This document shows positions 2,039 to 58,910 of a stretch of DNA of 64,000 nucleotides, piece by piece. Both the position numbers and the translations under genes were made by a program. Each line of letters opens with the position of its first letter. Positions within the stretch are counted from its first letter, which is position 1. A model generated the notes under the pieces. The model made no database searches and was not told the DNA's origin. It saw only the letters and a program-made list of their open reading frames with translations. The DNA lies in the IMG/VR virus record IMGVR_UViG_3300031576_000001, positions 124,001 to 188,000 of that record; one strand, 5' to 3'.

Positions 2039-2170
2039 CCTATACAGGGTTTCCATACGGGTCAAAGATGACCTTGCCACTATTTACGATGTTTTTATCA
2101 CTGTGCCCCTGGGCGGGGACTCCAGTGACGATCAAGCGGAAACTGTCAAAGTGTATGGAAGCTCAGGGGT
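2039..2170 (+). repeat. dispersed ~130-bp intergenic element, copy 1
   Basis: Near-identical to 21867-21998; invariant core TTTACGATGTTTTTATCA; TTCCATAC (2051) and GTATGGAA (2153) inverted boxes; GGTCA-AAGA-TGACC and CACTG...CAGTG palindromes. Confidence 0.9.
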
Positions 2171-2221
2171 CTCACCTTACCCCTCATGCAGGTGCAACCC
2201 TTTGCTACCTGGCGCTAAGGG

Positions 2222-2992
2222 GTGCGGCGCAAGATCGTAACCATTGGTACGGACGGCTTCTGTGACTACCTGCGGGTAGACGAGGCCAAGTACAACCTGG
2301 GGGCGGTCTCTGTGTTGAAGCTGGTCACGGAGACGAGCGCTGACATTTGGGAAGCCAAGGACACGGTAGAGGCGTTCTTGCGTGACGGTGAGGCTACTTT
2401 TGCTGCTGACCTGGACAGGGTAGACGAGCTTTGCGCGCCAGCGCGCCCACGGTTTGCGTTTCAGTGGGACTGGTCAGCTCCCCCGCGCCCTGAGAGCAAA
2501 CACCTTTCCCCGGAGACAGTTTACATGGCACACGACCCTCTAAGCGACGCTACAAAGCAAGGCATTGCGAACATTGAGCGTGAGATTGGGCTCCTTGAGC
2601 AGTCCGCGCGTGACAACAAGGGCATCACGGCGGACCAAGCCAAGAGCACCGTCGCCGTACTCAAGAAGATCATCGGGGAAATGCGGTCCCCCGGGGGGTC
2701 TATCGCTGGCAAGGACCAGAGCGATAACAGCACGTACTACAAGCTAGGCGCAGAGGGTGAGCAGATCGAGGGTGTCTTTACCAAGATGCACAAGACGGCT
2801 GACAAGATTCGCGCCCTGTCTGCCGCTGGCAAGAACTTCAACGCCAAGAGGGCTCTTGACGACGTGTACGAGGTGACCACGGGGGTCACGGCGCTCCTAG
2901 ACACGCCCGACCTGGCTACGGTAACGCCCGAGATTCAGAAGCTAGCGAGCAGGGCGGACCACCTACACGGGCTGTTCTTCCCCAAGGGTTGA
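2222..2992 (+). CDS. hypothetical protein
   Basis: 256-aa ORF, GTG start after TGCTACCT motif at 2203, ends TGA. Confidence 0.7.
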   Translation: MRRKIVTIGTDGFCDYLRVDEAKYNLGAVSVLKLVTETSADIWEAKDTVEAFLRDGEATFAADLDRVDELCAPARPRFAFQWDWSAPPRPESKHLSPETVYMAHDPLSDATKQGIANIEREIGLLEQSARDNKGITADQAKSTVAVLKKIIGEMRSPGGSIAGKDQSDNSTYYKLGAEGEQIEGVFTKMHKTADKIRALSAAGKNFNAKRALDDVYEVTTGVTALLDTPDLATVTPEIQKLASRADHLHGLFFPKG

Positions 2993-3014
2993 GGCTGTGC
3001 TACTTGCGTGGGCG

Positions 3015-4103
3015 ATGACCCAAACCAAGCTGTGCCAAAGGTGCATAAAAGACCTCCCTCTAGAGTCTTTTTACACCCACAACGGCAAGTCGTCCTCCGC
3101 AGTCTGCAAGCCGTGCAAGCTCGAAGAGAGCAAGCTCAAGTACCACGACCCAGAGGAGCACAAGCGCCAGCTTGAAGTGCGCCTTGCTGCCCAAGCTCAG
3201 CGCAAGCTCGACGAGAAGCAAGTTCGCACCCACAAGACCTGTACCCTCTGCCACCAAGAGAAGCCCCTGGGTCAGTTCTACAAGGCGTTGGGCGCACCGC
3301 GACCTAGCTGCAAGGTGTGCGACGACTCCCGACGTAAACCTACACCCAAAGTGATAGCCCGCAAAGAGGCATGGGCCGCGAAGGTTGCGGAGCGCGAAGC
3401 TCAGGAAGCTCTGGCTTTGCAAGCCGTGGGCGAAACCAAGTTCTGCGAGGAGTGTCGTGTAGACCGCCCTGTGGCGTGCTTCTACGTACCCAAGAAAGGC
3501 AAGCCTTGTAGCCCCCTCTGTAAGTCCTGCCTACGCGAGGACTTGAAGCTCAGCCGGTCTGACCCAGAGCAACACCGGCAGAAGGTAGCTCTACGCCTTG
3601 AGGAGCGTCTAGCGCGCGACGTGCTGGCGCAAGAAGCTGAGAAGCTGATTGCCGCGAAGGTGTGTACCTGTTGCAAGGTCGAGAAAACTCTTGGTGCGTT
3701 TAGGGCGCACCGTGGCCTTTATGGTCGAAGTTCATACTGCCGAAGGTGTGAACAAAAAGCCGCCCGAGAGTATTGCAAGCAAAACGGAGAGGCTTTGCGC
3801 GCACGGGCTAAGGTCTGGCGTGATGCCAACCCTGAGAAGATCAAGGCTATCATCCACCGTCGTCGAGCACGGCAAGCCGCGCTCCCTGACACGCTGACGG
3901 AAAATCAGTGGAAAGACATTCTGGTGTACTTTGACTACCGCTGTGCATACTGCCTCAAGAAGCTAAACTCCCCCACACTCGACCATGTTATTGCAATGGC
4001 TCGCGGCGGTGGGACTACAGAGGAAAACTCCGTACCGGCCTGTGGTTCTTGCAATAGCAGTAAACATGATCGTCTTATCTTTAGCATGTTGGAAAGGGCT
4101 TAA
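3015..4103 (+). CDS. HNH endonuclease with four N-terminal CxxC...F...CxxC zinc-finger repeats
   Basis: C-terminal CAYC...TLDHVIAMARGG...NSVPACGSCNSSK HNH motif; repeated CxxC units; preceded by TGTGCTACTT at 2996. Confidence 0.9.
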   Translation: MTQTKLCQRCIKDLPLESFYTHNGKSSSAVCKPCKLEESKLKYHDPEEHKRQLEVRLAAQAQRKLDEKQVRTHKTCTLCHQEKPLGQFYKALGAPRPSCKVCDDSRRKPTPKVIARKEAWAAKVAEREAQEALALQAVGETKFCEECRVDRPVACFYVPKKGKPCSPLCKSCLREDLKLSRSDPEQHRQKVALRLEERLARDVLAQEAEKLIAAKVCTCCKVEKTLGAFRAHRGLYGRSSYCRRCEQKAAREYCKQNGEALRARAKVWRDANPEKIKAIIHRRRARQAALPDTLTENQWKDILVYFDYRCAYCLKKLNSPTLDHVIAMARGGGTTEENSVPACGSCNSSKHDRLIFSMLERA

Positions 4104-4106
4104 CTC

Positions 4107-4790
4107 ATGGCAGGCATTGAAACTCGTTACCCGTACAAGGTCGGAACGTCGAGCCAGACCCACTCGGTGGTGTCGCAGAAGAACAAAGTCTACTCGTACC
4201 AAGTCGGGAAGAATCAATACCAGCAAATCGGGGTAATGACCACGTTTGGACTCGACGAGTCTCGCACGGTGGACGTTGTTCGGGGTGTGGGTTTTGGTGA
4301 CCAGATTGCCGAGCTAGTCCCCGGTAACACGGAACCTGTGAGCATTTCCGTAGAGAAGACCTTGCTGTACCTTCTGAACCTATTTCAGGCCATGGGGTAC
4401 AAGGGTGGTGTTGACGGTCTAGCGCGTTCACTCAAACACCACCGCTGGCCGTTTGACATCAAGCAAGAAATGGTGTTCTCGGAGCTAGCTAGTATTGATG
4501 CCCAAGCCTACCCAGGTGCAAAAGCCGCTTCTATTGGTTTCCTCCAACCCGGTATGACTCTCGTACCACAAGAGGTGAAGGCGCTCTTTACCATCTTTGA
4601 GGCGTGCTGGTTTGAGCAGTACGGAACCAGCTATGGCGCGGATCAAGGCATGGTAGCAGAGTCCTCTTCGATTAAAGCCTCAGATGTAGTAGACGGAACA
4701 TCGCAGTACGGTGAGTATATTGACACAGGACTTGCACCAAACATCCAAGGTGCCGGTGCTGGAAAAGGATTCTCCATACGCTTCGGTTTA
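4107..4790 (+). CDS. putative tail tube protein
   Basis: Size, beta-rich character, 'GDQIAELVPG', 'PFDI' and 'EACWF' resemble gp19-like tubes; precedes chaperones and tape measure. First in-frame TTA 4788-4790 (standard code ends 4805). Confidence 0.7.
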
Positions 4791-4834
4791 CCCCTCTTAG
4801 TGTAACCCCATTTTCGTGGGAGTCCCAAATACAG

Positions 4835-10445: not shown

Positions 10446-10449
10446 CCCC

Positions 10450-11349: not shown

Positions 11350-11378
11350 TCCGTGAGGCTGCGCCCTAGACAAGAACC

Positions 11379-13445: not shown

Positions 13446-13449
13446 CCCC

Positions 13450-16686: not shown

Positions 16687-16713
16687 CGCCCCGCGTGGTA
16701 CACTGAAAGCCCT

Positions 16714-19063: not shown

Positions 19064-19104
19064 GGGGAAGTAGTTACACCGCTCACCCTTCTCACGGGTT
19101 AGGG

Positions 19105-19308: not shown

Positions 19309-19325
19309 GGTCTTGTCTCCCCTTC

Positions 19326-19583: not shown

Positions 19584-19588
19584 GACGG

Positions 19589-19933: not shown

Positions 19934-19935
19934 GA

Positions 19936-19968
19936 CCCCTCTTACGCTCAGCCTACCTCACGATTCAC
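19936..19968 (-). promoter_or_regulatory. GTGAAY-N16-YGTAAGAGGGG promoter/RBS motif
   Basis: GTGAAT-16nt-CGTAAGAGGGG-TC-ATG; same spacing at 22023 and 58756. Confidence 0.7.
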
Positions 19969-20354
19969 GGAATTCTCTGGTACGGGTCAGGGATGACCCT
20001 TGCCTTACGAGGGCTAGCGTCCGCCAAGAGGCTGTTTAGTTTCGTGGCTTGCTTTTGAAAAAACTGGGCTACGCGCTCCAATGCCCAGGTTTTTGCAACG
20101 TCGAGACTGCGCCTTGCGAGGCTTTTTGCGGGCATGTGCCAGACGGCAACCTCTTCGCAGGATTGGTAGCTCAACCAAGCGTACCACTTCCCGGTCAGCG
20201 CAGCGCCTTCCAGGGAAGGCGCGCCCCCCCAAGAGGACAGCTCGACGGCGAAGTTATGGTCAAGGTCATAGGTGTAGGTCGTAACACGCCCACACCCTTC
20301 CTGCTCGGTGTCGAGGAGAACCCTCCACCCCTTAGAGGCTTGTTTGTGGTTCAT
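19965..20354 (-). CDS. hypothetical protein
   Basis: TGATG coupling with upstream gene at 20354. Confidence 0.6.
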   Translation of the reverse strand: MNHKQASKGWRVLLDTEQEGCGRVTTYTYDLDHNFAVELSSWGGAPSLEGAALTGKWYAWLSYQSCEEVAVWHMPAKSLARRSLDVAKTWALERVAQFFQKQATKLNSLLADASPRKARVIPDPYQRIP

Positions 20355-21394: not shown

Positions 21395-21495
21395 TCTCTT
21401 AGCTAGCGGAGGGGTGGAATGTGACCCTACAGAAAGCCGTGGGGTAGCCTCCTTTGACAGAGAGGGCGAGCGCCAAGGGGTGTACTCCTCTTGGC

Positions 21496-21852
21496 ATGAG
21501 AAACCACATCCTCGCCCGAATCCCCACCGCCACCCTGGTCCGTGGCCCCGTTTGCAGCACGTTGACCCCCGAGCAGATCGAGCGCGCCAAGCGCTTCATC
21601 GGGGTCTTTGCCGAAGTCTCCTCGATGAGCCTGGAGAGCTTGACCCACGACGAAAACCCCGAGCGGGAGATCCGCATCTGGGAGGACATGGCGGTCGCCT
21701 ACACCAAGAGCGTCGGTAGCTGCAAGACCGCCGCAGACCGCAAGAAGCTCTACCTCAACATCCTTCAGAAGACCCTGGACGCCCCGGAAACGGCGATCAT
21801 CGTCAAGCCCGTAGGGCTGCGCCCGTGGCGGTCCCCCTTCAAGGGTGCTTAG
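21496..21852 (+). CDS. hypothetical protein
   Basis: Strong GC3 coding pattern; 'DENPEREIRIWE' motif. Confidence 0.7.
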   Translation: MRNHILARIPTATLVRGPVCSTLTPEQIERAKRFIGVFAEVSSMSLESLTHDENPEREIRIWEDMAVAYTKSVGSCKTAADRKKLYLNILQKTLDAPETAIIVKPVGLRPWRSPFKGA

Positions 21853-21866
21853 TAAGCCTACCTAAA

Positions 21867-21998
21867 CTATACAGTGTTCCCATATGGGTCAAAGATGACC
21901 CTGCCACTATTTACGATGTTTTTATCACTGAGCCCCGAGGCGGGGACTCCAGTGACGATCAAGCGGAAACCGTCAAAGTGTATGGAAGCTCAGGGGGT
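21867..21998 (+). repeat. dispersed ~130-bp intergenic element, copy 2
   Basis: Near-identical to 2039-2170. Confidence 0.9.
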
Positions 21999-22022
21999 GC
22001 AAGGCGACCCCAGCAGAAAGTT

Positions 22023-22055
22023 GTGAACGGTACCCTTGGTTGAGTGTAAGAGGGG
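22023..22055 (+). promoter_or_regulatory. GTGAAY-N16-YGTAAGAGGGG promoter/RBS motif
   Basis: GTGAAC-16nt-TGTAAGAGGGG-TT-ATG(22058). Confidence 0.7.
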
Positions 22056-22057
22056 TT

Positions 22058-22246
22058 ATGGAAAACCTCTCAGCCTTCAAGGTGACCGTCAAGGTGGGTC
22101 GCCGCACCCTGAGCTTTATCCGGTTCGCTCCTAGCCTGGAGGCGGTTGTGGTGGACGCCCACAGGGTTCTGAGCCAGGACTTTGCCCGCACCCAAGCCAA
22201 GCTCCTCTCGGTCGAGCCCACCCTGGACCCCCGGGTGACCTCGTGA
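22058..22246 (+). CDS. hypothetical protein
   Basis: ATG directly after the promoter motif; GTGA-coupled to next gene. Confidence 0.65.
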   Translation: MENLSAFKVTVKVGRRTLSFIRFAPSLEAVVVDAHRVLSQDFARTQAKLLSVEPTLDPRVTS

Positions 22247-22647
22247 CCCCGGAGAGGGCGTTGGCGGGCTACCCCGTGACAAGGGCGCAAGTCCAGTGGG
22301 GGCTAAAGCTCTACCGGTACGTGGCGGGGTTGCGCTTCTTTGACTTCCCGATCCGGTCGTGGGGCGATGTTCACCCTCACTTGAGGGATTCACCCTGGTT
22401 GAGTAACCAAGGCGTAGCGCCGACGCGCGAAGAGGTCACGGGGGCGTTGCACAACCTCTTGGACCGAGCGATCACGCACAAAGGTGCCGCGCCGACTCCG
22501 AGGAAAGCTGAGTTTGACTACCAGGCTCAGCTTTACCGTGACCAGTGCCGGCTGCAAGACATCGCAAAGAGGGTCCGTGTGTACCAGTTCGAGACCCGCC
22601 AGTGTCGCGAGCGCTTTTCGCACCTCTTGTCCAGGTACGACGACTAA
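22243..22647 (+). CDS. hypothetical protein
   Basis: 134 aa, ends TAA 22645-22647. Confidence 0.65.
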   Translation: MTPERALAGYPVTRAQVQWGLKLYRYVAGLRFFDFPIRSWGDVHPHLRDSPWLSNQGVAPTREEVTGALHNLLDRAITHKGAAPTPRKAEFDYQAQLYRDQCRLQDIAKRVRVYQFETRQCRERFSHLLSRYDD

Positions 22648-23019
22648 GGGCTTCTCGGGTTCACCCTCGGTTTGCCCCTCTGGGTCTGCTTTGCCTTCGG
22701 CGCCCTTGGTTTGGGTTGGACGCAGCCATTTATCCAGGTTGTTACCCAACCCAAACGCCTGGCGTTCCTGGGGGTTGAGCTTCAGGTAGGCGGACTTCAG
22801 CAGTTCCTTCGCGCTCGGGTATGGGCTAAGGACACCCCGGATGATGAACCTCGGCGTACCGTCAGCCTCGCAGAAGGTGAGACTGTGCCTCTCGGCACAC
22901 CCCTCGTGGGTACTAACCGTGTACAGGTGCAGATTGATCAAAGGGCCCCCGTCGTCAAGCTGCGCCTTGTACCAGTCAGCAAAGGTGTCAGCCGTAGAGA
23001 CTTCGTGCAACTCTTTCAT
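22645..23019 (-). CDS. hypothetical protein
   Basis: ATGA-coupled to 23016-23204; first in-frame TTA is the reverse complement of the convergent gene's TAA (standard code gives a 258-nt antisense overlap). Confidence 0.6.
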
Positions 23020-23204
23020 GCACCTTCTGTATATTCGGTAAAGTCCCCAAGGGAGAGAGTGAGCCTGTTAGTCAGCTCCTTTTTCAGATCCTCCGTGATG
23101 TCTGGGATCGTCTCATCACGGAGGATGTCGATAAGAGTACACGCTTCTTCGAAGTCGAGCGTGAAGGTGATGGTTTGCGGCGTCACTGTTGTTGTCACGA
23201 TCAT
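23016..23204 (-). CDS. hypothetical acidic protein
   Basis: 62-aa ORF coupled to downstream gene. Confidence 0.6.
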   Translation of the reverse strand: MIVTTTVTPQTITFTLDFEEACTLIDILRDETIPDITEDLKKELTNRLTLSLGDFTEYTEGA

Positions 23205-23353
23205 GGTACGCGCTTACTACACCAAGCAAGAGCACCCTTGGCAAGAAAAGGAAAATAACGACCCGACCCGACAGGTGGTGCTCTAGTGAGGGTGGTGACT
23301 CTTCCGACTACACACACTGGCCCTGGCTTTACCCTTGTGCTACCAAAGCGGGA

Positions 23354-26300
23354 ATGACCTTCAGCCTCTCAGGTTACGTGCTCTTCTCACCTCGGGTAGG
23401 GGGTGGGAATGGTCCCTACACGTCAACCCCAGACGCCGTGGTCCTTGACCAAGCGGCTTTTGACGCGGCGTACCCCTCCGACGAGTCGGTACCCCGTTGT
23501 GACTACCTCGTCCTACCCCTTACCCAGGGTGACCTCCACCAAGCCCAGTTTGGGTGGGTACGCAATGACACCCCGTTGGAGCGCTTTGGTTACGACGGGC
23601 GAGCGGATCACTTCCGACCCCTCCAGGGTGGACCCCCCCAAGAGGTAGGTGTTACTGGACCCACCAGTAACACGGACAGGATGGCGGTGCGCCCCATCCC
23701 CCTCTTGCCATTGTCTCCCTCTCAGCCGGTCAGGGTATTCTTGTCGTCGGGCTTTGAGCTTACAGTGCAAACCAAGACCCTTGACGCTGACTTTACCGTG
23801 GGTGGTCCGCTCCCTGGGTTTGTCGAGGTCTCTCTAGAGACCGGCAGACTCAACTTTGCTACGGCGGACCTCACCTCCTTTAATAGGCAGGGGGTACGCT
23901 ACCAGGGGCAACGGTACGCGGGCGACAGTAACCACCCTCTTGGCTTTTACGGTCTGGACACGCTGTACCTCAACCCTCTCCCTGGGACGGGGCAGTACCC
24001 CCTGGTCAAGGTCGAGGAGGGCGTGTGGCTCACCCCCGTAGAGGTTCCTGATGAGGGTTCCTTTACAGTGCCCGCTGCTGGTACGTTCCAATGGGCTCGC
24101 GACACAGGCAAGGTAAACGTCCCCTCTGACGTGGACCTCCTCGGGCTGCGTGTCTTTTACGATGGTGTACTTCTCGCCGCGCCCCTCTCGGTACCCTCGG
24201 CTCCCCTGGGAATGGTTCAGGCGAGCAGACTGACCAGCGCCAACGTACCCCTCTCCTTGTTGGTTCCGGGTGCGGACCTTTGGCTACGGGTGGGCTCTAC
24301 GCAACTGGCGGCAGTCAAGCTGGTGGCAGCTTTTGATGGTACGGCGGGGCAGGCTGGCGTGGTTGAGGTAGTAACCAGCACGGGGCAAGCGAAGCTAAGC
24401 CAGGTAGACACCAATGCTCTCCTCGGTCAGCCCGCCACGGTCTACTCCGGTGACCTCCCCATTGAGCGTGGCGTTGCACTCAGGCTCTTCCGTAGCCCCG
24501 TCAACCTGACGGGGGGTACCGTCAAGGACGTAACGACGACGTACACGGCTGAAAACGCTACGCTGGCAGCGCCCCTCTTGGGTACGCCCAGCGTGAGTCT
24601 TCCGCAGGTTCCCATTGACGACCGGCTTTACGATGACCCCGCCTGGCTAAACCTACTTGCTCTCCCCCCGCTGTCAGACCCCTCTACGGGAAGATTGCGC
24701 GTAGAGGTTACCCAAGGGACCGGTAGCGTTACAGGGGTACAGAAACGACTTGACTCCCCCGTAGCCCCCCCGGACGCAAACAGCGCTGGCGTGGTGCTGG
24801 ACGGGGCTAGTTTGTCCCTGGCAGAGCGCAAACTCGACGTGTTGGTTACGCCCACCACGCGCACCGGAAGCGTCACATTGCCTGACCCCGCCTTGGTTAC
24901 CTCTTCGCTAGAGAGGGAAACCTTCGCCGGGTCAGGCACCTTTGTACCGATAACCGAAGGCGTACAGTACAGCCTGGACCCTTTTAGCGGGGTGGTGTCC
25001 CTTATCACCTACCCTGGCACGCCCCTCGTTACGGACAAGGCGAGCGCCTCAGTCTCGGGCTTCGTCCTCACGGACACTTCCGGTGTCAACTTCCTAACAG
25101 AGGGGGTATCTTCCGACTCCCTGGTTATCGTCCGTAGCCCGCCCGTCGTCGAGGGTGTCTATGCCGTCATCGCCGTAGGCGCTACCACGCTTACCCTTGA
25201 CGTGTCGCTGCCTCCTACCGCCCCTGTAACTTACGAGGTCCGAAGCGAGCCCGAGATCCTGAGAGATCGGGTGTGGCGCCCATTTGCCCCCCTCGACCCG
25301 TCTTTCCAGCTAGAGCGGTACACCCCTCTAGGTACGGTGCAGAACGCGCCTCCGCTAACCACGGACACAGGGAATGCTCCAAGGTTGCGGTTCAAGATTG
25401 GCAACGCGCTAACGCCCCTTGTCACGGTCAAGCCGGATGACGCCAGCCTCACGCTAGCCGGCGCACTACCCTCCCTCTCCGTGGAGATTAGCCAAGAGAC
25501 AGGGCACCTTCGGTTCAGTGCGCTCGACCTGGGTTTCCCTCTAGCGCAAGCCGTAACCTTGAGAGACGGTGCAGATTACAAAGTCTCACCGGACCTTGGG
25601 TTTGTCTCCCTCGCCCGACCCTTTCTCTCCGGGGAGTCGGCGCTGGTGACGTACCGTCCCACGCTGGACGCTCCGACCGTGACGGAGCCGGTAGGCTTTC
25701 AGATCAGCCGAGAGGCGTTTACGGCGGTAGCCCCGACGACCACGGTACTTTTCAACCAAGCTGGGCTACCGGTAGCCCCTGCTCCGCCCCCTCTCACCCT
25801 AAGAGGGTCACGACCCCAGGTTGAAGGGGTTACGGTGGTAACGAACCTCGCCAATGGGACCGTGACCTTCTTGCCGTCCGCTCAGGTGACCAAGCACTTC
25901 CCCGCTGGTCCCTTGGAAATAGGGGAGACTGTCTACATAACGTATTTTGTGACGGTGGCGGCGGGGGGCGAAACCTCGTTTACCGTGTTGCAAGGCACCA
26001 TTGCTACCCAGCCGGTCACCCTCTCTCAGGGGGACGTGACCATCACCTTCCCGGGTGACGTGACGCTCACGCTGGCACCCTCCGTGGCTTTGCGAGTCAG
26101 TGTCTCTGACGTGTACCTCGTCCAAAGCTCGGCTTACAACGGCAGCGTGACAACGGCGACCCTGAGTACGCCTCTTCGGCAAAGCGTTACCGCCCCTCCC
26201 CTTGAGGTCACCTCCGGCCCCCTCTCCTCGTACTTCCTCCCTGACCTTGGCTTTTACGAGGCTTTGCCCAGGGGAGCCAAAGAGGCTCGGCTTGTCGGAG

Positions 26301-29146
26301 ACAGGGTAAAAAGCTACCCCCAAGGCACCCTTGTCCTTTGGGATGGTGAGCCGTACCACGTAGAGGGGGTCAAGCGAGACGGGGGGGTGACGGTGCTCTC
26401 CCTTGGCGCGGCAACCGACCGGGAGTACGCCGGGGTTTCACTGGCGCGCTCTATCCGACCCGTGCTCCCCGGGGGTGCTGCTGTCAGTACCCAGACGCCC
26501 CTCCTTGACGGTGTGGACCTCCTCTACCGCAAGGTGCCAGGTCAGGTAGGCTCCTTGCTAGAGGGGGTTACCGTGACAACCTCGGGTCAAGTGACGGGGC
26601 TACCCCCTCTGGGTGACAGCGAAGAGCAAGGGGTGGCTTACCGTGGGTACGGCAGCCTAGAGGCCGGGCAGAGTCTACGGGCGAGCTACACCGTTAAGAG
26701 GGTGCCTACGGCGAGCAATGGGTACGCCGGGCAAGTCTTGGTCGCCACGTACACCACATGGTCCCCCGATAGCTTTTACTTCCGAGTTGAGAAGCTGTCC
26801 GATGTGCGCGCAGAGGCAGCCCGGCGCCAGCAAGCCGAGGTTTCAGCGAGTCTACCCTCCTCGGGTCCAAGGCTGAGTAATGACCCTGGGTTGACACTAG
26901 CCGACAGGGGGCGAGCCTCGGTCTTCTACGAAGAGAGCGTGTACCGCAACGATGACGTGGCTTTCCGCTCCTTCCTGCTCTTTACCAATGACCTCGTTAC
27001 CCTCTTGGAGAACGCCAGGCTGGATGCTGTAGGGGTCAACGTGGGGGGGCGTGACGGTCAGCTACGGTTCAACGGCTCGCTAACGAACCCAGCGGTCGTG
27101 ACGGTCAGCGTAGCCCTCAATCAGATTGACGACCTGTACCAAGTAAGCCCTGGACCCTACGTGGTGACAGGTCCACCCTTTGTTGTTACGCCGCAGTACA
27201 CCTATGCCCCCGCGTGGACGCCTGCCCCGCAAAGCCGGTTCTTCAAAGCCAAGAGGCGTCCCTTTGGAGTAGCCTCTGTGGCTGCACTACCCGCGCAGGG
27301 TGACGTGGTTCTTGACCTGGGGGTCCGTAACTTGACCCAAGTGTCTTACGTGAGGGACCGGCAACCCTGGGCGCTTGTCACAGCGCCCGCAGCTTCGGGT
27401 GCCTTTACCGTGTCCGTGGATGACGCTGACGGCGACGCCTACCTCGTCCGCCCCAACTTCGGGGTGGGTAATCAAGTAGACCTCCTACGCCCCGATGGGT
27501 CCGTGGTTGGAGGTAGCCCTTACGAGATAGCCTCCCTCACGCCAACCTCCCTCACGTTCACGGTGGCTCTGACAGACAACGTACCCAGGGGGGCAACGGC
27601 GGTACGCTCTTTGGACGACCTGGCGTACTATCAAGTCGGAAAAGACCTTGGGCTAGACGCAACGGGTGGGCTTCTCACTTACATTGTGCCCTTTCCTCCG
27701 CTGGACGGTTCGGTCCCGCTTGTGCCGGCGGCGCTAGAGGTACTCCCCCCCAACCCGGGGCAGCCTCTTAGCACAGAGGTTTTCCTGTCCCCCGCAGCCA
27801 CCACGCCAGACCGCCCCCCGGTGCTGGACGGTCTAGACCTGGACGACGACGGCGAGGTTAGTTTTCCCTTGCAAAGCCCCACGGACGTTTGCGAGCAAAA
27901 CAGCTTGGGGGTGGGCAGGTTGCCTGACGTGTTTGCTCGGTATGCTGCCCTTGTGAGCGTGACGACACCCACGGAGACCTTCACGGCGAATTTGACGGCG
28001 CTCAACGTGATTACCCGGACAAGCGGGAACTTCGGAATCCTGCCGCTACCCGGTCAACTGGTCCGAATCCTCTCCGGGGTACACGCGGGCACCGCCTTTG
28101 TGCGGGTTGCCTCTGCAACCCTAACGGCGATCACGGTGGACGTACCCTACGGCAGCCTCGACACTGGCTTTACTGCGGTTGTAGGGGTCTCTTTGTTCGC
28201 CTTGACCGGCGCAGGCACCGTCATTGCTTTTGGTCTCACGTTGGAGGATGCCGTAGCTACCTTTCAGACCAACGGGGTTCTACCTGGGTACACCGTGGTC
28301 AATACGGTTACACTGGAGAGAAGCCAGGTCACGGCTGTACCGGACGAGACGCACCTGACGCTGGCTTCCCCGTTGACGCTGGGTGCTATCAATTACAGGG
28401 TAGAGAACCCGTTGTGCTCCTTCTCTGCGCTAACCACGCAGTCTACGGCACTCGACAAGCTGAGAGAGGTTGTGGCGACCAATGACCTCCCTGCCCTCCC
28501 CAGTGAGATAAGGGCGCTAGAGAGGGCGCTGGACCTCATATTCACGGACAGGGCAGGTAACCCGGAGTCTGTCACTGTTACGTTGCCCTCCACGGTAACC
28601 GGTCCCGTCTGGTCTGGCGTGACGCCAGGCGACACCGTGTTCTTCCGAGAGGGTGCAAACAGGGGCGTCTACACGGTGGCTTCCGTGGTGGGCACGGTTA
28701 TCACGGTTTCCGGGGCTCTTTCGCTAGCGGGCTCTGACTTCGTTCGGGTGGTCCAGCTAGAGGGCGTGAGCCAAGAGGGCGTAGTTACGCTGGCTAGCCT
28801 CCTCTTTGAAGTAGACGACTACAACTCGGCATTGATCGCGCTGTTGGTCCAACTAGCGAGCTTTCCAGTGCTTTCTGCATCCTACGCCAACAGGCTGGTC
28901 AGCTCAGAGCTGACCCCTTTGCTTGCGGTTCTTGCTGTGCGTGACCCGGCAGCTTGGGAAACTAGGGTCTTTTCCTTTCTCCGTGGGGGAGAGCGTTTGT
29001 ACGACAAGAGGTTTGCGTGGATAGACGGCAGATTGAACAAGTTGACGGGGACGCTGGCTCGGATAGCGCAGGCAAGGCAACGCCGGCTACAGAACCAGGC
29101 CAGCCTGACCAACCAATTGATACGCCTCCTCAGCCTCAGTGGGTTA
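23354..29146 (+). CDS. very large beta-rich virion structural protein (baseplate/tail associated)
   Basis: ATG at 23354 after TGTGCTACC; ~1930 aa of repeated beta domains with helical C-terminus; first in-frame TTA 29144-29146 (standard end 29254). Confidence 0.7.
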
Positions 29147-29268
29147 GGCGTGACAAGCTGCCTATCCAAGAGAAGCTCTCCGACGTGCTTAGAGCCACCA
29201 TTGAGGCTACCAGACAACAAATTGCGCACGAGAAAGCCAAGCTCGCCAGGATGACAGGGAGACGCTAG
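29017..29268 (+). CDS. small coiled-coil protein, start unresolved
   Basis: 'QWVRRDKLPIQEKLSDVLRATIEATRQQIAHEKAKLARM' is helical and TAGTG-coupled to 29268; no clean start outside the upstream gene. Confidence 0.45.
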   Translation: MDRRQIEQVDGDAGSDSAGKATPATEPGQPDQPIDTPPQPQWVRRDKLPIQEKLSDVLRATIEATRQQIAHEKAKLARMTGRR

Positions 29269-31406
29269 TGGCGGATTGGAAGACCTACAAGCTAACCATA
29301 CCGGGCACGGACCTCTTCAAGAAGGTCAGGGACGCCCTAGAGGTACTTGTCGCGCTGTTGGACTTCCTCAAAGCCCTGCTCAACACGGTCAAGGTCTTCC
29401 TGGTAGACTTCGGTAACCCGCTCATCGCGCTCATTCAGGCGCTCATTCTCCTGCTGGAAGCCTTTATCAACTCACTGCGGGCCACGGGGCTATTTGGTTT
29501 GTACCATGTACCGCCCGTGACGTGGGATGACTTCCTCGACTTTTTCAACGGTACGGCGCCCTTTACGGAAGTCTTCAAAGCCAGCCTCTTTGACGGCAAG
29601 GACTACAACCGCCCTCAGCCTATAACGGGGGCTACCAAGAGCGGGTTTATCTTGCTCGTTGTGGATGCTTCCGACGTGGCTACCCTGGTCAGGCGCATAC
29701 AACAACTCCTTGCCCTCTTCGGTAAAGAGTTTGCCGCCCCAAGGCTAAGAGCCCCTCAGAACGTCAAGGTCTTTCCGCTGGACGGTGGCAAAGACCCCTT
29801 GCTGTCACTGCCCGCGGTCTTCGGGTCACCTACCAAGGCTTTGGCAGTCGAGTGGTCCAACCCTACCCAGATTCTCCCGCCGGACCCTGGCTTTGAGGGG
29901 CAGCTAACCTCTCTCCGTGATGAGTTTACCGCCCCTGGCTACCTCATCGAGCGTACCGAGGAGCCCACGGGCAAGACGGTGACCCACGGTGTCGAGCAAA
30001 CCGACCTGAGAGGCAGGGTGAGTACGGCACAGTTTGTAGTCAGGGAGGACAGCGGCAGGCTCTTCAGGGAGTACAGCGCTTACTTCGGGGTCGCTCCGGG
30101 TGACTTTACTGCGACTTTCTTGCTCGGCTCGCTGGGTACGTTCCGGTTTATCGACGACACGGTTGAGAAAGGTAAGCGGTACACTTACCGGGTGAGACCC
30201 TTCCTGGGCGAGCTAGGTCTGGACCCTGTGTTCCATGAAATGCCCTTCCCCCCTCTCCGTGAGAAGCGGTTTGGTTTGCGGCAGTTTGTTCAAGACTACC
30301 CCGGCAAGAACCTGATTCTGGGCGACCCCTCGCCCGAGGCGTCTGGCGTAGTGGCGGACCTCCCGCTTGACTTTGACGTGCTCAACTCGCTTCGCACCCT
30401 GTTCAAGACAGCGTTCTCACTGAACTTTCATTTGCCTTTGCCAGTGGGAGCGACCTTCGATAACAAGGGGTTTCCCACGGGAGTCACGAGCCCCTCTTCG
30501 GTAGGCAAGGGCTCTCTTCTGCCTCTGGCGTCCTCACTGTCCCAGCTTGTGGGTGAGCCTGTTGCGCAGGAAATCCCCCTCACGATAGACAAGACCCCGC
30601 CTGGCGCTGTGCAAAGCTACGAAGAGATAGGCAACCTGCCCCCCAGTAGAGTACCCAAGTTTCCTTGGCAAACCTTTACGGTAAGGCGTCGGGCGAACCA
30701 GCTAGCCATACAAATTGCGGGCGCCATGCTGGACAACCAAGGGACTGCCTCTCGGTACAAGGCGCTCATGACGGGCGGGCTACCCTTCGGTCAAGTGCAG
30801 TTTGGGATTCTGACGAGCGCGATTAACATAGAGGGTCTTACCACGGGGCTAGTACGAGACCCTGGCCCGGGGCTACCGGTAGAGACCCTCAACGGGGCTT
30901 ACAACCTGTACTTCATGGACCCCGTCTACCGGCTCAATGTGCTCGCCGCTGTCAAGTTTGCGTTGACGCTGGCCAGCGTGGGTACGCCGCCAAACTGGGT
31001 AAGCATCTCGGTCTTCAGGGACATTGTGCCGTGGCTGGGGGAGATATTCAACGACATACTCGCCAAGATTCAAGCCCTTGTGGACGCCTACAACGGGGCA
31101 ATCAAGGAGATCAAGGCGTACATTGACTTGATCCAGCGCAAGATTGACGCCCTGGAAAACTTCTTGAAGTTCCTTATCTCGATTCTGGACCAGATCGAGG
31201 CGTTGGAGCTTACCGTTAGCGTGCTCAACTCGGGCACGGTCAACGTGGATGCCTCCGGGTGGGCTGACATTGTGGACAGCGCCTCTACGCAACCCGCCGC
31301 CCCCTCGCGTGACCCTAACGGCTACTCAGCCGGCGTCGCGCTGGCTTACGTAGGCTCCGACGTAAAGGCTTTCGAGACCGCCCTAGAGGCTCTCTTCGGC
31401 AAGTAA
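29268..31406 (+). CDS. putative virion structural protein with N- and C-terminal amphipathic helices and an Fn3-like core
   Basis: 'FIDDTVEKGKRYTYRV' Fn3-type motif; paired helical ends. Confidence 0.65.
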   Translation: MADWKTYKLTIPGTDLFKKVRDALEVLVALLDFLKALLNTVKVFLVDFGNPLIALIQALILLLEAFINSLRATGLFGLYHVPPVTWDDFLDFFNGTAPFTEVFKASLFDGKDYNRPQPITGATKSGFILLVVDASDVATLVRRIQQLLALFGKEFAAPRLRAPQNVKVFPLDGGKDPLLSLPAVFGSPTKALAVEWSNPTQILPPDPGFEGQLTSLRDEFTAPGYLIERTEEPTGKTVTHGVEQTDLRGRVSTAQFVVREDSGRLFREYSAYFGVAPGDFTATFLLGSLGTFRFIDDTVEKGKRYTYRVRPFLGELGLDPVFHEMPFPPLREKRFGLRQFVQDYPGKNLILGDPSPEASGVVADLPLDFDVLNSLRTLFKTAFSLNFHLPLPVGATFDNKGFPTGVTSPSSVGKGSLLPLASSLSQLVGEPVAQEIPLTIDKTPPGAVQSYEEIGNLPPSRVPKFPWQTFTVRRRANQLAIQIAGAMLDNQGTASRYKALMTGGLPFGQVQFGILTSAINIEGLTTGLVRDPGPGLPVETLNGAYNLYFMDPVYRLNVLAAVKFALTLASVGTPPNWVSISVFRDIVPWLGEIFNDILAKIQALVDAYNGAIKEIKAYIDLIQRKIDALENFLKFLISILDQIEALELTVSVLNSGTVNVDASGWADIVDSASTQPAAPSRDPNGYSAGVALAYVGSDVKAFETALEALFGK

Positions 31407-31676
31407 GGGTTGTCCTAGGTTACAGGTTCCTCTTTGGTACCCTACGCGGTTTGACGTCCAGGCAACTACGCGCGTATTTGGCGTACATGGACGAGAGCCC
31501 GTCGTGCGAGAAGTCCGTGAGAACTTCTTCGCCCGCGCTGCGTTGGCTGCTGTAGAGGAGAACCGTGTGGTTAGGGGTCATGGTATCCGCTCATACGCCC
31601 GCACCTCTTGGCGATTCACGACTATTTCTTGTGCTACCCTTACCTACACGACTCCCACGGAGAGGTTACGCCTACC

Positions 31677-32432
31677 TTGCCCCACGCAGACATACATGGC
31701 ACCTACAACCGCTCACAACTCACGCGGTTCCTGACCTACGCCCGCTCACAGCTACCTTACGTAGAGGGGCGTATCCTACACCTAGAGGCTGAGGTTGAGC
31801 GTACCGGTCAGCTACTCATGGCACTTGACGCCAGCGGTAACCCTCTTGGGTACTCCTCGACCCCCCCTGGCTCGGTCGTTGACCGGCTTTTCAAGAGTTA
31901 CCTGGCGCAAGGCGGCTCCCCTCTCTTTGATTTGCAGCTACGGGCGATGTCTCAGCCCGTGTACTTGCAGAAGGGGGACGAGACGACGGCGCCTCAGCTT
32001 TTCAACAACGGAGAGGTTCTAGGCAGGGGCTACAACCTGGACGCCACGACGGGCGAGCTAATGTTTGGGGTACGGACCTGGCTAGATGACGCGCTGGGGA
32101 GCCGGCTTGGGTGGTTGGAGCGCCAGATCCGGCGCCACCAAGACTACCGTGACCAGCTTAGCGCTGAGGTTGCCCTACTCAGGCTCATCACTAGCCCGGC
32201 GGACACAGGGGGCTCCCTTGCAAACCTAGCTAACGAGCTAACTACCCTTCTCAGTGACCCCTTGTACCGCGCCGTCTATGACGACCTGGGCAAAGACCCC
32301 TTCGGTCGGCTCACCGCGGCGCCCTTTGCCGCGTATGACACCACGGGGGAGGCTGGCGAGACAAGAGCCCCCCAAGAGGAGTACGTGAAAACCAGCAAGG
32401 GTGTCGTGGTCCCTGGTCAGCGTAGCGTGTAA
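31677..32432 (+). CDS. hypothetical protein (start uncertain, 31608 or 31677)
   Basis: Helical ORF in the structural module, ends TAA. Confidence 0.6.
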   Translation: MPHADIHGTYNRSQLTRFLTYARSQLPYVEGRILHLEAEVERTGQLLMALDASGNPLGYSSTPPGSVVDRLFKSYLAQGGSPLFDLQLRAMSQPVYLQKGDETTAPQLFNNGEVLGRGYNLDATTGELMFGVRTWLDDALGSRLGWLERQIRRHQDYRDQLSAEVALLRLITSPADTGGSLANLANELTTLLSDPLYRAVYDDLGKDPFGRLTAAPFAAYDTTGEAGETRAPQEEYVKTSKGVVVPGQRSV

Positions 32433-38395: not shown

Positions 38396-38414
38396 GTAAG
38401 TGCCTCGCCCCGTG

Positions 38415-38708
38415 TAAGCAAGGCGTGGTGTCGGAACCCTCTTCGGTCGCCGTGCTGGACAACTTCTGCGGAGAGAGCAGCATACTGGCGTAAGCCTTGC
38501 ATACGAGAACGTCGAGACGGCGTAGACGATTAGCCTCTTTGCTCAGGCGGATAGCCTCCGCTTGGTCGCGTGCCTGGCAGATCAGGTCGGCAACATCCCT
38601 CATGTGGATCACGCCCAAGAGGAGGTACATGAAGTTCTCGACGACTCCGTTGAGCTTGTCTAGCTCGTAAGGGGTGGCGCCGTGGTTGGGTTTGGGGTTC
38701 TCGGTCAT
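38415..38708 (-). CDS. hypothetical protein
   Basis: ATG at 38708 coupled to upstream gene; first in-frame TTA 38415-38417 removes overlap with baseplate J (standard end 38370). Confidence 0.55.
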
Positions 38709-38974
38709 AACTCGTCCTCTACACCGCAGGCGTTCAGGTCGCTCGGAGGGAACACACGCACTTCCACCGTCTTGACCTCGGGCGTGACCCCAAGGTACTT
38801 TTTGACCCAAGCCTCCCCGTTGCCCTTGCGCACGTCCATCTTGAAGACCGGAGGCAGCCCGTGAAACCTTGGGTAGGGTAGCGGGGCGTCGCCCGGGGGG
38901 TACAGGAACACCTTGTCATGCGTGGGGTACACGTAAACCACCACGCGAGCAATCGGCAGACTGAGAGGCAACAT
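38708..38974 (-). CDS. hypothetical protein
   Basis: ATG after GTGTAAGGGGG; ends GAG-TTA-TGA (standard end 38705). Confidence 0.65.
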
Positions 38975-39052
38975 GACACCCCCTTACACCGCCTCTCGGG
39001 GGGTTGTCTAGAGCCCTGTAGTATGGGTCTCTTTACACCCACCTCGACCTAC

Positions 39053-39183
39053 AAGTGTATGGAGAAATTCTGTCGGTGCACACTGGAGTCCTCCCCTCGG
39101 GGCTCACTGATAAAAACATCGTAAAAAGTGGCAGGGTCATCTTAGACCTACCCGGAAGTTCCATATGGGTCTGTATGGAAACC
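39053..39183 (-). repeat. dispersed ~130-bp intergenic element, copy 3
   Basis: Reverse-strand copy with invariant core; 3' AAGTGTATGGA box inverted relative to the other copies; extra 5' CATATGGAA box. Confidence 0.85.
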
Positions 39184-39193
39184 AAGAGGGCTC

Positions 39194-39403
39194 TCAGGTC
39201 TTCAAGAGACGACCATCGCACCCTCGGTGGAAGGTGGGTATGTACACGCCCTCTCTAGAGGGACCGCCCGGGGGGTGCCGTCTGTACTCTTTTCCGCAGA
39301 GGTGGCAGAGCGCGCCGCCGTTTACTCGGTGGCACTCTTCTACGGTGTCGCACCAGTCAACGAACCAGGGGCATCCTCCCACAGGGAGCACCACGCATCG
39401 CAT
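39194..39403 (-). CDS. small Cys/His-rich protein
   Basis: CHLCGKEYRRHP...HRGCDG. Confidence 0.55.
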   Translation of the reverse strand: MRCVVLPVGGCPWFVDWCDTVEECHRVNGGALCHLCGKEYRRHPPGGPSREGVYIPTFHRGCDGRLLKT

Positions 39404-39438
39404 CTTTAGTTCTTTCCTGCTACCTGTAGGCAGAGTGC

Positions 39439-46083: not shown

Positions 46084-46096
46084 GGTCTAAGCGAAG

Positions 46097-53188: not shown

Positions 53189-53191
53189 GCC

Positions 53192-53809: not shown

Positions 53810-53822
53810 AGCCTTAGCCAAG

Positions 53823-58142: not shown

Positions 58143-58160
58143 GGCTAAGACTAGCTGACC

Positions 58161-58409
58161 TAAGCCCCCTTTGACCGTGTAGCGTAGAGGGTGGGGCGCT
58201 GTCGCGGGCTGCGTGGGGCTGCGCCCTTCAAGCGAGGCGCACCACGCGAGCGTGACCCGGGCTTCCTCTTCGGAGGGGGCTTCTACCTCGTCGAGATACC
58301 AGAGCTTCTTTAGCCAGGCCGGCGCCCGGTATACCAGGCAGAACAGGTTGTCCCACCACCGGGTATTCTGGTTTGCTGGGTCCACCGTGAAAACGTGCTT
58401 GGTAGCCAT
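58161..58409 (-). CDS. hypothetical protein
   Basis: ATG at 58409 after GAGG; first in-frame TTA 58161-58163. Confidence 0.55.
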
Positions 58410-58420
58410 GAGGTAACCTC

Positions 58421-58720
58421 TCAGGGGGTAACGGTTTTCTTGCTCTGGCGCGGGAGGCTGATACGCCCGACCCCGCGGATCTTGGCGAGCGCCGCACAAG
58501 CCTCTTTGAGGCTGCTGCACTCTTTGACCGCTTTGCAGGCAGTACGGCAGTCGTAGATCGTCCAGGCAATGTACTTGACCGGACCACCGCCCAGCTTAGC
58601 GTGTCCAGACCAGTAACGCCCCACCTCGAAGCTGACCATGTACGCCTGGTCGGCGGTCTTGTACGCCCTCTCCCCCCAGGGGATGAGCTTCTCGGTCTTG
58701 GTGCTGTCGGTGGTGTCCAT
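58421..58720 (-). CDS. hypothetical protein
   Basis: ATG directly after the conserved promoter motif. Confidence 0.65.
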   Translation of the reverse strand: MDTTDSTKTEKLIPWGERAYKTADQAYMVSFEVGRYWSGHAKLGGGPVKYIAWTIYDCRTACKAVKECSSLKEACAALAKIRGVGRISLPRQSKKTVTP

Positions 58721-58723
58721 GCC

Positions 58724-58756
58724 CCCCTCTTACGCTTACCCTAGCTCCGAATTCAC
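58724..58756 (-). promoter_or_regulatory. GTGAAY-N16-YGTAAGAGGGG promoter/RBS motif
   Basis: GTGAAT-16nt-CGTAAGAGGGGGG-C-ATG. Confidence 0.7.
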
Positions 58757-58773
58757 AACTTTTGTTGGGGTCA

Positions 58774-58910
58774 CCTTGTACCCCCGGCGTCTCCATACAC
58801 TTTCACGGTTTCCGTGTTCTGCACACTGGAGTCCCCCTCTAGGGGCTCAGTGATAAAAACATCGTAAAATGTGCCAGGGTCATAGGAGACACCTCCGGTT
58901 TTTCCATACG
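58774..58910 (-). repeat. dispersed ~130-bp intergenic element, copy 4
   Basis: Reverse-strand copy with invariant core; 5' box reads CGTATGGAAA, inverted relative to copy 1. Confidence 0.85.

What the first reader, a model, noticed from the sequence alone, without database searches (positions are those of the whole stretch)
2039..58910. Four-copy ~130-bp non-coding element with invariant AT-rich core, always upstream of co-oriented genes
Copies lie at 2039-2170(+), 21867-21998(+), 39053-39183(-) and 58774-58910(-), spaced about 17-20 kb apart. Shared layout: CCATA box, ATGACCYTGSCAC, invariant TTTACGATGTTTTTATCA, GC-rich palindromic segment ending GACTCCAGTG, and a GTGTATGGA box. Each precedes genes in the same orientation, and two sit just upstream of the ECF-like promoter. 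No transposase or target-site duplication is evident. Candidates: regulatory enhancer/operator cassette, structured RNA, distributed replication or recombination site, or a genome-organisation anchor (regular spacing).
Basis: partly seen in the sequence, partly recalled or inferred. Interest (0 to 1): 0.7.

Follow-up and report, generated by a model that had tools for sequence, protein, structure and literature searches.

The report
Repeated regulatory cassette of jumbo phage
A non-coding cassette of about 215 bp with a nearly invariant 60-bp core is repeated six times (plus two decayed copies) in one uncultivated jumbo-phage genome, always at a fixed distance in front of unrelated small genes. 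It is most likely a shared transcription-control region that also acts as a recombination patch, like cassettes known from T4-type phages and mycobacteriophages.

Summary
The repeat is real. The invariant 18-mer occurs 4 times in the window against 0 expected by chance. It occurs 6 times in the 322,633-bp phage record, and two decayed relatives are also present.

The conserved unit is longer than reported, about 215 bp. It runs from a CCCTCTTGG word, through a swappable module, a 60-bp core (AT-rich 18-mer plus GC hairpin), a second swappable module and a second hairpin, into a two-box ECF-sigma-type promoter-like motif that abuts the start codon. The core lies 139-151 nt before the start codon in all six copies. 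The downstream genes are unrelated ORFans.

Five of the six copies sit in ORFan islands between conserved structural operons, which explains the 17-20 kb spacing in the window. Spacing is not periodic genome-wide.

There is no Rfam hit, no significant covariation, no terminal repeats with target duplications, no recombinase, and no homologue in 31 related phages, metagenomes or bacterial genomes. Flanking modules are recombined across the invariant core.

Best reading (about 0.45): a DNA-level upstream control cassette attached to a phage-specific promoter class, doubling as a homology patch for gene shuffling. Rivals are a structured leader or ncRNA, a MITE-like element, and a replication origin.

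The parts
2017..2224 (+). Copy 1 (g126083), whole cassette: CCCTCTTGG word 2017-2025; type-A module 1 with TTCCATAC box 2051-2058; core 2068-2127; type-A1 module 2 with GTATGGAA box 2153-2160; hairpin E about 2166-2183; degenerate two-box motif 2192-2221; GTG start 2222.
2083..2100 (+). Invariant AT-rich 18-mer of copy 1.
2099..2127 (+). Hairpin P1 of copy 1 (CACTG..CCCC, 5-nt loop, GGGG..CAGTG, two bulges), -14.7 kcal/mol.
21844..22060 (+). Copy 2 (g145910), whole cassette. The 5' end overlaps the stop codon of the upstream ORF 21454-21852. Core 21895-21954; 18-mer 21910-21927; P1 21926-21954; hairpin E about 21993-22010; GTGAAC box 22023-22028; GTGTAAGAG box 22044-22052; ATG 22058 of a 62-aa ORFan.
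38972..39191 (-). Copy 3 (g163108, type B), whole cassette: CCCTCTTGG word 39183-39191; local TTCCATA/TATGGAA hairpin in module 1; core 39081-39140; 18-mer 39108-39125; weakened P1 39081-39109; CCATACAC box in module 2 (39038-39078); hairpin E about 39025-39042; degenerate two-box motif; ATG 38974 of an 89-aa ORFan (38705-38974).
58718..58934 (-). Copy 4 (g182851, recombinant: B-like module 1 with A2 module 2). CCCTCTTGG word 58926-58934, which codes the C-terminus of the upstream 131-aa ORF (58913-59308). Core 58824-58883; 18-mer 58851-58868; P1 58824-58852; hairpin E about 58768-58785; TGTGAAT box 58751-58757; GCGTAAGAGGGG 58724-58735; ATG 58720 of a 99-aa ORFan.

Best explanation
The element is a lineage-specific cis-regulatory DNA cassette of an uncultivated jumbo myovirus-like phage, estimated at about 470 kb.

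It is the upstream extension of one promoter class. That class is CGTGAAY, 16 nt, GCGTAAGAG, GGGTT, ATG, with about two dozen sites in the record. It is probably read with a phage protein that carries a sigma-70 region-4 domain.

In six of these sites, about 165 bp of extra conserved DNA sits 30-190 bp upstream of the start codon. This DNA holds an invariant AT-rich 18-mer, a GC-rich palindrome, and two or three CCATAC boxes in either orientation.

Inferred mechanism: a phage or host DNA-binding factor occupies the boxes and core. It switches these six small ORFan genes on or off together, as one temporal or conditional sub-regulon. Alternatively, the core is a second, earlier promoter placed in tandem.

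Because the 60-bp core is kept nearly identical, it also serves as a homology patch. Flanking modules and downstream genes are exchanged across it, which places and reshuffles accessory genes in the islands between conserved structural operons.

Shown: the repeat, its anatomy, fixed geometry, context, mosaicism, and lack of RNA covariation. Inferred: factor binding, co-regulation, and a role in shuffling.
For: Fixed geometry:
- The 18-mer lies 139-151 nt before the start codon in all six copies, always co-oriented. The six downstream proteins (62-256 aa) are unrelated and have no Pfam or PHROG match.
- There are no length changes across about 150 aligned columns, even where modules A and B are only 32-39% identical.

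Link to a promoter class:
- The 3' end of the cassette is the genome-wide two-box motif, with 23 regex hits, most directly before ATG.
- The record encodes a 215-aa protein with Sigma70_r4 (E 1e-13).

Arguments for a DNA-level role:
- Copies g244996 and r94 fill divergent intergenic regions, leaving no room for an upstream promoter. Their 5' halves cannot easily be RNA.
- The CCATAC(AC) box occurs in both orientations at about the same place.
- Eight of the 11 TTCCATAC sites in the genome lie in the copies.
- Hairpin P1 is degraded in type B (-8.8 kcal/mol, z -0.07), although the sequence is otherwise kept.
- The covariation score is 0.101, equal to the shuffled mean.

Context and exchange:
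- Five of six copies lie in ORFan islands between genes that are syntenic with the complete relative G001.
- Module identities cluster incongruently. Copy g182851 pairs with g2232 in module 2 (88%) but not in module 1 (44%), while the core is 80-99% identical in all pairs.
Against: - No sigma-70-type promoter is predicted in copy 1, and no factor that binds the boxes or core is identified.
- The sigma-like protein is not a canonical ECF sigma. Region 2 was not found.
- The two GC hairpins and the inverted repeats that flank the core in some copies would also suit an RNA or single-stranded DNA structure. These repeats are 8 nt in copy 1, 9 nt in copy 4, and 23-nt arms in r94.
- No transcript data exist.
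- With only 3-4 independent sequence types, the absence of covariation is weak evidence.
Confidence: 0.45

Rival explanations
1. Structured RNA. The cassette is transcribed, from read-through or its own promoter, as a long 5' leader or an ncRNA of about 170 nt. Its folds would be the P0 and P1 hairpins, a small triloop hairpin, hairpin E, and a long-range helix made by the CCATA boxes. These would control stability, processing or translation of the downstream gene, for example by pairing CCCUCUU or the core with the AAGAGGGG region.
For: - RNAalifold predicts four hairpins plus pairing of the core with the start region.
- P1 folds at -15 to -18 kcal/mol with z of -1.9 to -3.6 in four copies.
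- Non-homologous inverted repeats enclose about 90 nt in copies 1 and 4, and r94 has 23-nt arms.
- A few G-U changes lie on the sense strand, and a triloop hairpin sits at the same position in types A and B with two double changes.
- The type-B pair is 97.6% identical over a sharply bounded 166 nt that ends at hairpin E.
Against: - No Rfam match at the gathering threshold or at E up to 10.
- The alifold covariation term is unfavourable (+1.17).
- The covariation score equals the shuffled mean, 253 of 500.
- Whole-leader z-scores are only -1.6 and -2.0.
- P1 is at chance level in type B, r94 and r300.
- Cognate upstream/downstream windows pair no better than non-cognate ones.
- Copy 4 has both boxes in the same orientation.
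- Two copies have no space for an upstream promoter.
- No hairpin is followed by a U-tract.
Confidence: 0.2
2. Mobile DNA. The element is a miniature non-autonomous element or selfish promoter cassette that copies itself into intergenic sites of the phage genome.
For: - It is dispersed and lineage-specific, and it is the only dispersed repeat family of the record.
- It is absent from 31 related phages.
- It lies in ORFan islands, and copy 1 is 0.8 kb from an HNH endonuclease gene that the relative lacks.
- Some copies have flanking inverted repeats.
- The left border coincides with the genome's hyper-abundant CCTCTTGG word.
Against: - There are no consistent terminal inverted repeats and no target-site duplications.
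- Position and orientation are locked to start codons and to the promoter-like motif.
- No resolvase or tyrosine-integrase domain is present in the record.
- There is no copy in bacterial genomes or metagenomes other than its own contig.
Confidence: 0.1
3. Distributed replication-initiation or single-strand initiation sites. The AT-rich core would be an unwinding or priming site flanked by protein-binding repeats.
For: - The AT-rich invariant segment sits in a 59% GC genome and is flanked by repeated boxes and palindromes.
- The cumulative GC skew of the record has its minimum at about 180-185 kb, next to copy g182851.
Against: - The AT-rich stretch is only 18 bp.
- No DnaA-box-like or iteron arrays were seen by eye.
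- Orientation and distance are tied to downstream start codons.
- Only one of six copies coincides with a skew extreme, and skew in this genome follows transcription blocks.
Confidence: 0.05

Closest known systems
PeSL (promoter-early stem-loop) cassettes of T4-type phages (PMC2839356, PMC4122927)
   Same: - Repeated intergenic regulatory motifs concentrated in hyperplastic ORFan regions between conserved core blocks.
- A GGGG...CCCC stem-loop, followed by an A/T-rich stretch and then a promoter.
- Proposed to act as homology patches for modular shuffling. Here the 3' part (hairpin E, AGAAAGTT, two-box motif) has this order, and the modules are mosaic.
   Different: - PeSLs carry a consensus sigma-70 early promoter and a tested terminator. 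Here no sigma-70 promoter or U-tract terminator is predicted, and the promoter-like motif is of the ECF type.
- This cassette has an extra 165-bp upstream part with a 60-bp invariant core that has no PeSL counterpart.
- There are only 6-9 copies.
- No sequence homology.
SAS / ESAS repeats of Cluster K mycobacteriophages (PMC3203893)
   Same: - A short conserved sequence lies directly before the start codons of a subset of genes (11-19 per genome). About half of these carry an additional upstream feature with imperfect inverted repeats.
- One orientation relative to the gene.
- Function unknown.
- Here about 23 start-linked motifs exist, and six carry the upstream extension.
   Different: - ESAS is a pair of 17-bp inverted repeats with a 4-13 bp spacer directly upstream of the SAS. 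This extension is about 165 bp with an asymmetric invariant core.
- The sequences are unrelated (the SAS is GGGATAGGAGCCC).
- ESAS sites are conserved at orthologous genes across a phage cluster. This element is absent from all 31 relatives tested.
Operator-flanked looped promoters and phage stoperators. The gal repressosome and mycobacteriophage L5 stoperators are cited from general knowledge, not tested here.
   Same: Short asymmetric protein sites repeated at many promoters or intergenic sites of one genome. Two sites about 100 bp apart flank an AT-rich segment.
   Different: No repressor has been identified. The boxes are confined to the 6-8 cassettes rather than spread over the genome. 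This is a resemblance only.
T7 RNase III processing sites (general knowledge)
   Same: Dispersed hairpins with internal loops that are co-oriented with transcription and lie between genes.
   Different: The helices here have 11 or fewer base pairs with bulges, which is too short for RNase III. Structure is not conserved in all copies.

Membership tests
PeSL (T4-type phages) | Repeated intergenic motif enriched in hyperplastic regions next to ORFans | tested here: met
   Five of six copies lie in ORFan islands between genes syntenic with G001. All downstream genes lack Pfam and PHROG hits.
PeSL (T4-type phages) | Contains a consensus sigma-70 early promoter | tested here: not met
   The scan of window 1800-2400 found 0 sigma-70-type sites. 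The attached motif is CGTGAAY-N16-GCGTAAG.
PeSL (T4-type phages) | Adjacent GC-rich stem-loop acting as a terminator | tested here: inconclusive
   GC stem-loops P1 and E are present. No T-run follows them, and 0 terminator-like sites were found.
PeSL (T4-type phages) | Recombination between copies (shuffling, mini-circles) | tested here: inconclusive
   Mosaic module pattern. Contig-level DNA data show no joints. Mini-circle PCR cannot be done here.
SAS/ESAS (Cluster K mycobacteriophages) | 13-bp GGGATAGGAGCCC directly upstream of start codons | tested here: not met
   The start-linked motif here has a different sequence, GCGTAAGAGGGGTT. It is an analogue, not a member.
SAS/ESAS (Cluster K mycobacteriophages) | A subset of start-linked motifs carries an upstream inverted-repeat feature that is conserved at orthologous genes in related phages | tested here: not met
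   Six of about 23 sites carry the extension. However, no relative has it.
MITE / non-autonomous transposon | Terminal inverted repeats and target-site duplication | tested here: not met
   Inverted repeats are internal, differ between copies, and are absent in copies 2 and 3 at 8 nt or more. Flanks show no duplication.
MITE / non-autonomous transposon | Cognate transposase or recombinase in the genome, and insertion independent of gene starts | tested here: not met
   No Resolvase or Phage_integrase domain. Only 68% of the genome is present, and Y1/TnpB-type enzymes were not searched. All copies are locked 139-151 nt before a start codon.
Any Rfam RNA family | Covariance-model match | tested here: not met
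   0 matches at gathering scores in the window. No consistent match at E up to 10 in the six loci.
Replication origin | Extended AT-rich unwinding region with initiator-box arrays, at a skew switch | tested here: inconclusive
   The AT-rich core is only 18 bp. The skew minimum lies near one copy only. Initiator sites are unknown for this phage.

The most novel reading that the evidence does not exclude
The cassette is a new kind of phage control element. In this reading it is a long, orientation-locked upstream platform (a nucleoprotein 'enhancer' or a cis-acting RNA domain). It gates a subset of possibly leaderless promoters read with a phage sigma-like factor. It spreads by copy-and-paste recombination that starts at the genome's hyper-abundant CCTCTTGG word, so regulation and gene acquisition in jumbo phages would be coupled through one element.
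Probability: 0.12. Interest if true: 0.65.

Novelty: new variant of a known kind. Interest (0 to 1): 0.4.

Why it matters
Jumbo phages carry hundreds of ORFans, and neither their regulation nor their route of acquisition is understood. A promoter-linked cassette with an invariant core, sitting exactly at the ORFan islands between conserved structural operons, points to a co-regulated set of accessory genes. It also gives a concrete substrate for modular gene exchange. This would extend the PeSL and ESAS idea from T4-type phages and mycobacteriophages to a large, uncultivated soil and cave phage lineage. The invariant 18-mer and the boxes are ready-made probes for finding the regulator.

Tried and rejected
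- **Regular spacing or anchor:** rejected. Intervals in the record are 124, 19.8, 17.2, 19.7 and 62 kb, with decayed copies at 94 and 300 kb.
- **Paralogous genes dragging their upstream regions:** rejected. Similarity stops at the start codon.
- **Small ORF in the core (ATGACC...):** rejected.
  - The stop position varies from 14 to 65 codons, with a TAG inside the loop in copy 4.
  - There is no ribosome-binding motif.
  - The 18-mer shows no synonymous variation even though it uses AT-rich codons.
- **Exact or near-exact copies elsewhere:**
  - IMG/VR gave one chance hit in an AT-rich giant-virus bin.
  - JGI metagenomes gave only the element's own contig.
  - Bacterial genomes gave three chance hits in low-GC taxa.
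- **Homologues in relatives:** none credible.
  - nhmmer on 58 loci and on the whole of G001 found nothing.
  - A covariance model run on 31 records gave a best per-genome E of 0.035, and the six best-scoring hits inspected look like ordinary coding sequence.
- **Closing-helix co-evolution:** RNAduplex on cognate versus non-cognate windows gave no signal except in r94.
- **T7-like RNA polymerase, RpoB and sigma region 2 in the record:** none found. The giant proteins in the window gave no polymerase hit.
- **RNA evidence:** none was listed.
- **DNA contigs:** they break at the repeat and show no alternative joints.
Full report
**What the window is.** The window is bases 124001-188000 of a 322,633-bp IMG/VR virus record from a cave metagenome, estimated 68% complete.
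- It encodes baseplate-J/wedge, baseplate-hub/lysozyme-like and tail proteins.
- It belongs to a large family of jumbo phages of about 410-450 kb. The baseplate protein is 49-59% identical across 54 of the 58 related loci found in IMG/VR (four distant ones are 31-33%), and several of those records are complete with terminal repeats.
- GC content is about 59%.

**Observation check.** The four copies align as described. The 18-mer TTTACGATGTTTTTATCA occurs exactly four times in the window, against none in 100 shuffles. It occurs six times in the record, at 2232-, 126083+, 145910+, 163108-, 182851- and 244996+.
- A profile built from these copies finds two further decayed copies on the + strand: r94 at 94253-94444, and r300 at about 299940-300060 (E 6.5e-6).
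- In the source DNA run the flanks have word depth of about 12, and the core reaches about 103. The complete genome probably has 8-9 copies. Strain variants in the sample could inflate this figure.
- Self-BLAST shows this is essentially the only dispersed repeat family of the record.

**Anatomy.** Read 5' to 3' on the strand of the downstream gene, the cassette has these parts:
1. A CCCTCTTGG word. In copies 2, 4 and g2232 this region overlaps the last codons or the stop codon of the upstream ORF.
2. Module 1, about 36 nt, in types A, B and B'.
3. A 60-nt core that is 80-99% identical between all pairs. It consists of a small GGTC/GACC hairpin overlapping ATGACC, then TGCCAC, the invariant 18-mer, and hairpin P1. 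P1 has 11 pairs, two bulges and a variable 5-nt loop.
4. Module 2, about 41 nt, in types A1, A2 and B.
5. Hairpin E, of the form GGGGT-N8-ACCCC.
6. An A-rich stretch and a two-box motif, GTGAAY-N16-GCGTAAGAG, followed by GGGTT and the start codon.

The 18-mer lies 139-151 nt before the start codon in every copy. There are essentially no indels over about 150 columns, although modules A and B are only 32-39% identical. The downstream proteins (62, 89, 99, 99, 166 and 256 aa) are unrelated ORFans.

**The 3' motif is a genome-wide class.** About two dozen sites share CGTGAAY-N16-GCGTAAGAG-GGGTT-ATG.
- Their G-run sits at -8 to -3 with TT before the ATG. Ordinary genes of this phage instead show G enrichment at -11 to -8 and C at -1. 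These sites may therefore start transcription at or next to the ATG; this is an inference.
- The record encodes a 215-aa protein with a sigma-70 region-4 domain.
- No region 2, T7-type polymerase or RpoB was found.
- The six-copy element is thus an upstream extension carried by a quarter of this promoter-like class.

**Context.** I made an approximate gene call and ran tblastn against the complete relative G001, which I fetched whole. The structural module is collinear between the two genomes.
- Copies g145910, g163108 and g182851 lie in small islands of ORFans that interrupt the long + strand structural operons.
- Copies g2232 and g244996 lie in ORFan-rich regions.
- Only g126083 sits between two conserved genes, and an HNH endonuclease gene that G001 lacks lies 0.8 kb downstream of it.
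- The 17-20 kb spacing in the window is simply the length of the structural operons. It is not periodic elsewhere.

**Is it a structured RNA?** The evidence is weak.
- Rfam gives nothing at gathering scores and nothing consistent at E up to 10.
- RNAalifold proposes four hairpins and a pairing of the core with the start region, but with an unfavourable covariation term.
- Whole-leader z-scores are -1.6 and -2.0.
- For P1 across eight copies, 79.5% of cells pair against 74.8% in shuffles (13/500). The covariation score equals the shuffled mean.
- P1 folds well in four copies (-14.7 to -18.2 kcal/mol). It is at chance level in type B, r94 and r300.
- Inverted repeats enclose the core in some copies: 8 nt in copy 1, 9 nt in copy 4, and 23-nt arms in r94. 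Cognate flanks nevertheless pair no better than non-cognate ones.
- The CCATAC(AC) box occurs in either orientation at about the same position, and copy 4 has both of its boxes in the same orientation. That pattern suits a protein site better than a helix.
- In g244996 and r94 the cassette fills a divergent intergenic region, so nothing upstream could transcribe its 5' half.

**Is it mobile, or borrowed from a host?** I found no support.
- There are no consistent terminal repeats or target duplications.
- No resolvase or integrase domain is present.
- No copy exists in IMG/VR, JGI metagenomes or 185,579 species genomes beyond chance hits and the element's own contig.
- None was found in 58 related loci, in the whole of G001, or in 31 related records searched with a covariance model.
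- The relative G001 has no comparable repeat family.

**Mosaicism.** Segment-wise identities are incongruent.
- In module 1, g2232, g126083 and g145910 cluster at 75-83%, and g182851 stands apart at 39-53%.
- In module 2, g182851 pairs with g2232 at 88%.
- The two type-B copies are 97.6% identical over a sharply bounded 166 nt.
- Exchange across the invariant core, or gene conversion, has therefore occurred.

**Mechanism.** I commit to a DNA-level upstream control cassette of a phage-specific promoter class, with confidence of about 0.45.
- A factor would bind the boxes and core to co-regulate six to nine accessory genes. The core might instead be a tandem earlier promoter.
- A by-product role, possibly itself selected, is as a homology patch that places and reshuffles ORFans between conserved operons.
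- Shown: anatomy, geometry, context, mosaicism, and the lack of RNA covariation.
- Inferred: factor binding, co-regulation, and shuffling.
- Rivals: structured leader or ncRNA (0.2), MITE-like mobile cassette (0.1), replication or priming site (0.05). The remainder is unknown.

**Comparison with known systems.**
- PeSL cassettes of T4-type phages have a stem-loop, an AT-rich stretch and a sigma-70 early promoter. They lie in hyperplastic ORFan regions and mediate shuffling (PMC2839356, PMC4122927). The order and the context are the same here, but the defining sigma-70 promoter and the terminator are not met.
- The SAS/ESAS repeats of Cluster K mycobacteriophages (PMC3203893) share the logic of a start-linked motif with an upstream extension in a subset of genes. 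They share neither the sequence, the size, nor conservation across relatives.
- The element works like these systems but is a member of neither.

**Verdict.** The feature is real. It is a new variant of a known kind and is restricted to one lineage, with no experimental handle yet. Interest 0.4.

**Limits.** The analysis rests on one genome that is 68% complete, on 3-4 independent sequence types, on no RNA data, on an unknown host, and on a home-made gene call.

Noticed in passing
whole record; in the window e.g. 2017-2025, 39183-39191, 58926-58934: The octamer CCTCTTGG and its reverse complement CCAAGAGG form the most over-represented 8-mer of the record. It occurs 262 times against 12.4 expected from composition (z 71). 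It is evenly spread on both strands and lies inside genes in both orientations, with a frame preference. The equally GC-rich relative G001 has only 44. The 5' border of the cassette is one instance. The meaning is unknown; a Chi-like hotspot, a nicking motif or a modification motif are possibilities.
   Followed up: partly
G000 record, about 23 sites; in the window 19936-19969(-), 22022-22055(+), 31587-31620(-), 58724-58757(-): A promoter-like class, CGTGAAY-N16-GCGTAAGAG-GGGTT-ATG, has fixed geometry relative to start codons. The G-run lies closer to the ATG than the ribosome-binding signal of ordinary genes, which suggests leaderless or near-leaderless transcripts.
   Followed up: partly
G000:58756-59403 (+), outside the window (L095:1363-2010): A 215-aa protein has a Sigma70_r4 / r4_2 domain at residues 47-95 and no detectable region 2. 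It is a candidate reader of the CGTGAAY box.
   Followed up: partly
G000:94253-94444 (+) and about 299940-300060 (+), outside the window (L096, L097): Two decayed relatives of the element. They keep ATTTnnCGATGTTTTT, the GCCCC-loop-GGGG hairpin core and the CCATA boxes, but lack the two-box motif. In r94 the core is enclosed by 23-nt imperfect inverted arms, and r94 fills a divergent intergenic region.
   Followed up: yes
window 2997-4103 (+): A free-standing HNH endonuclease gene (PF01844, E 9e-10) with many CxxC pairs lies between conserved structural genes. The relative G001 has no counterpart.
   Followed up: partly
G000 about 22,000-32,000, outside the window: Long stretches without ORFs are rich in tRNA T-arm words such as GGTTCGAATCC. 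This probably marks a large tRNA gene cluster. It was not checked with ARAGORN.
   Followed up: no
window 38396-39438, compared with G001:293627-312831: The gap after the baseplate-J gene is a hyperplastic site. It is about 1 kb in this phage (89-aa ORFan plus copy 3) and about 19 kb in relative G001.
   Followed up: no
window 61403-62020 (-): A 205-aa protein carries a HAD_SAK_2 domain, the HAD domain of 'Swiss Army Knife' RNA-repair proteins (E 9e-15).
   Followed up: no
G000:300504-300682 and 304568-304687, outside the window: Short tandem repeat arrays lie in long intergenic regions near the decayed copy r300.
   Followed up: no
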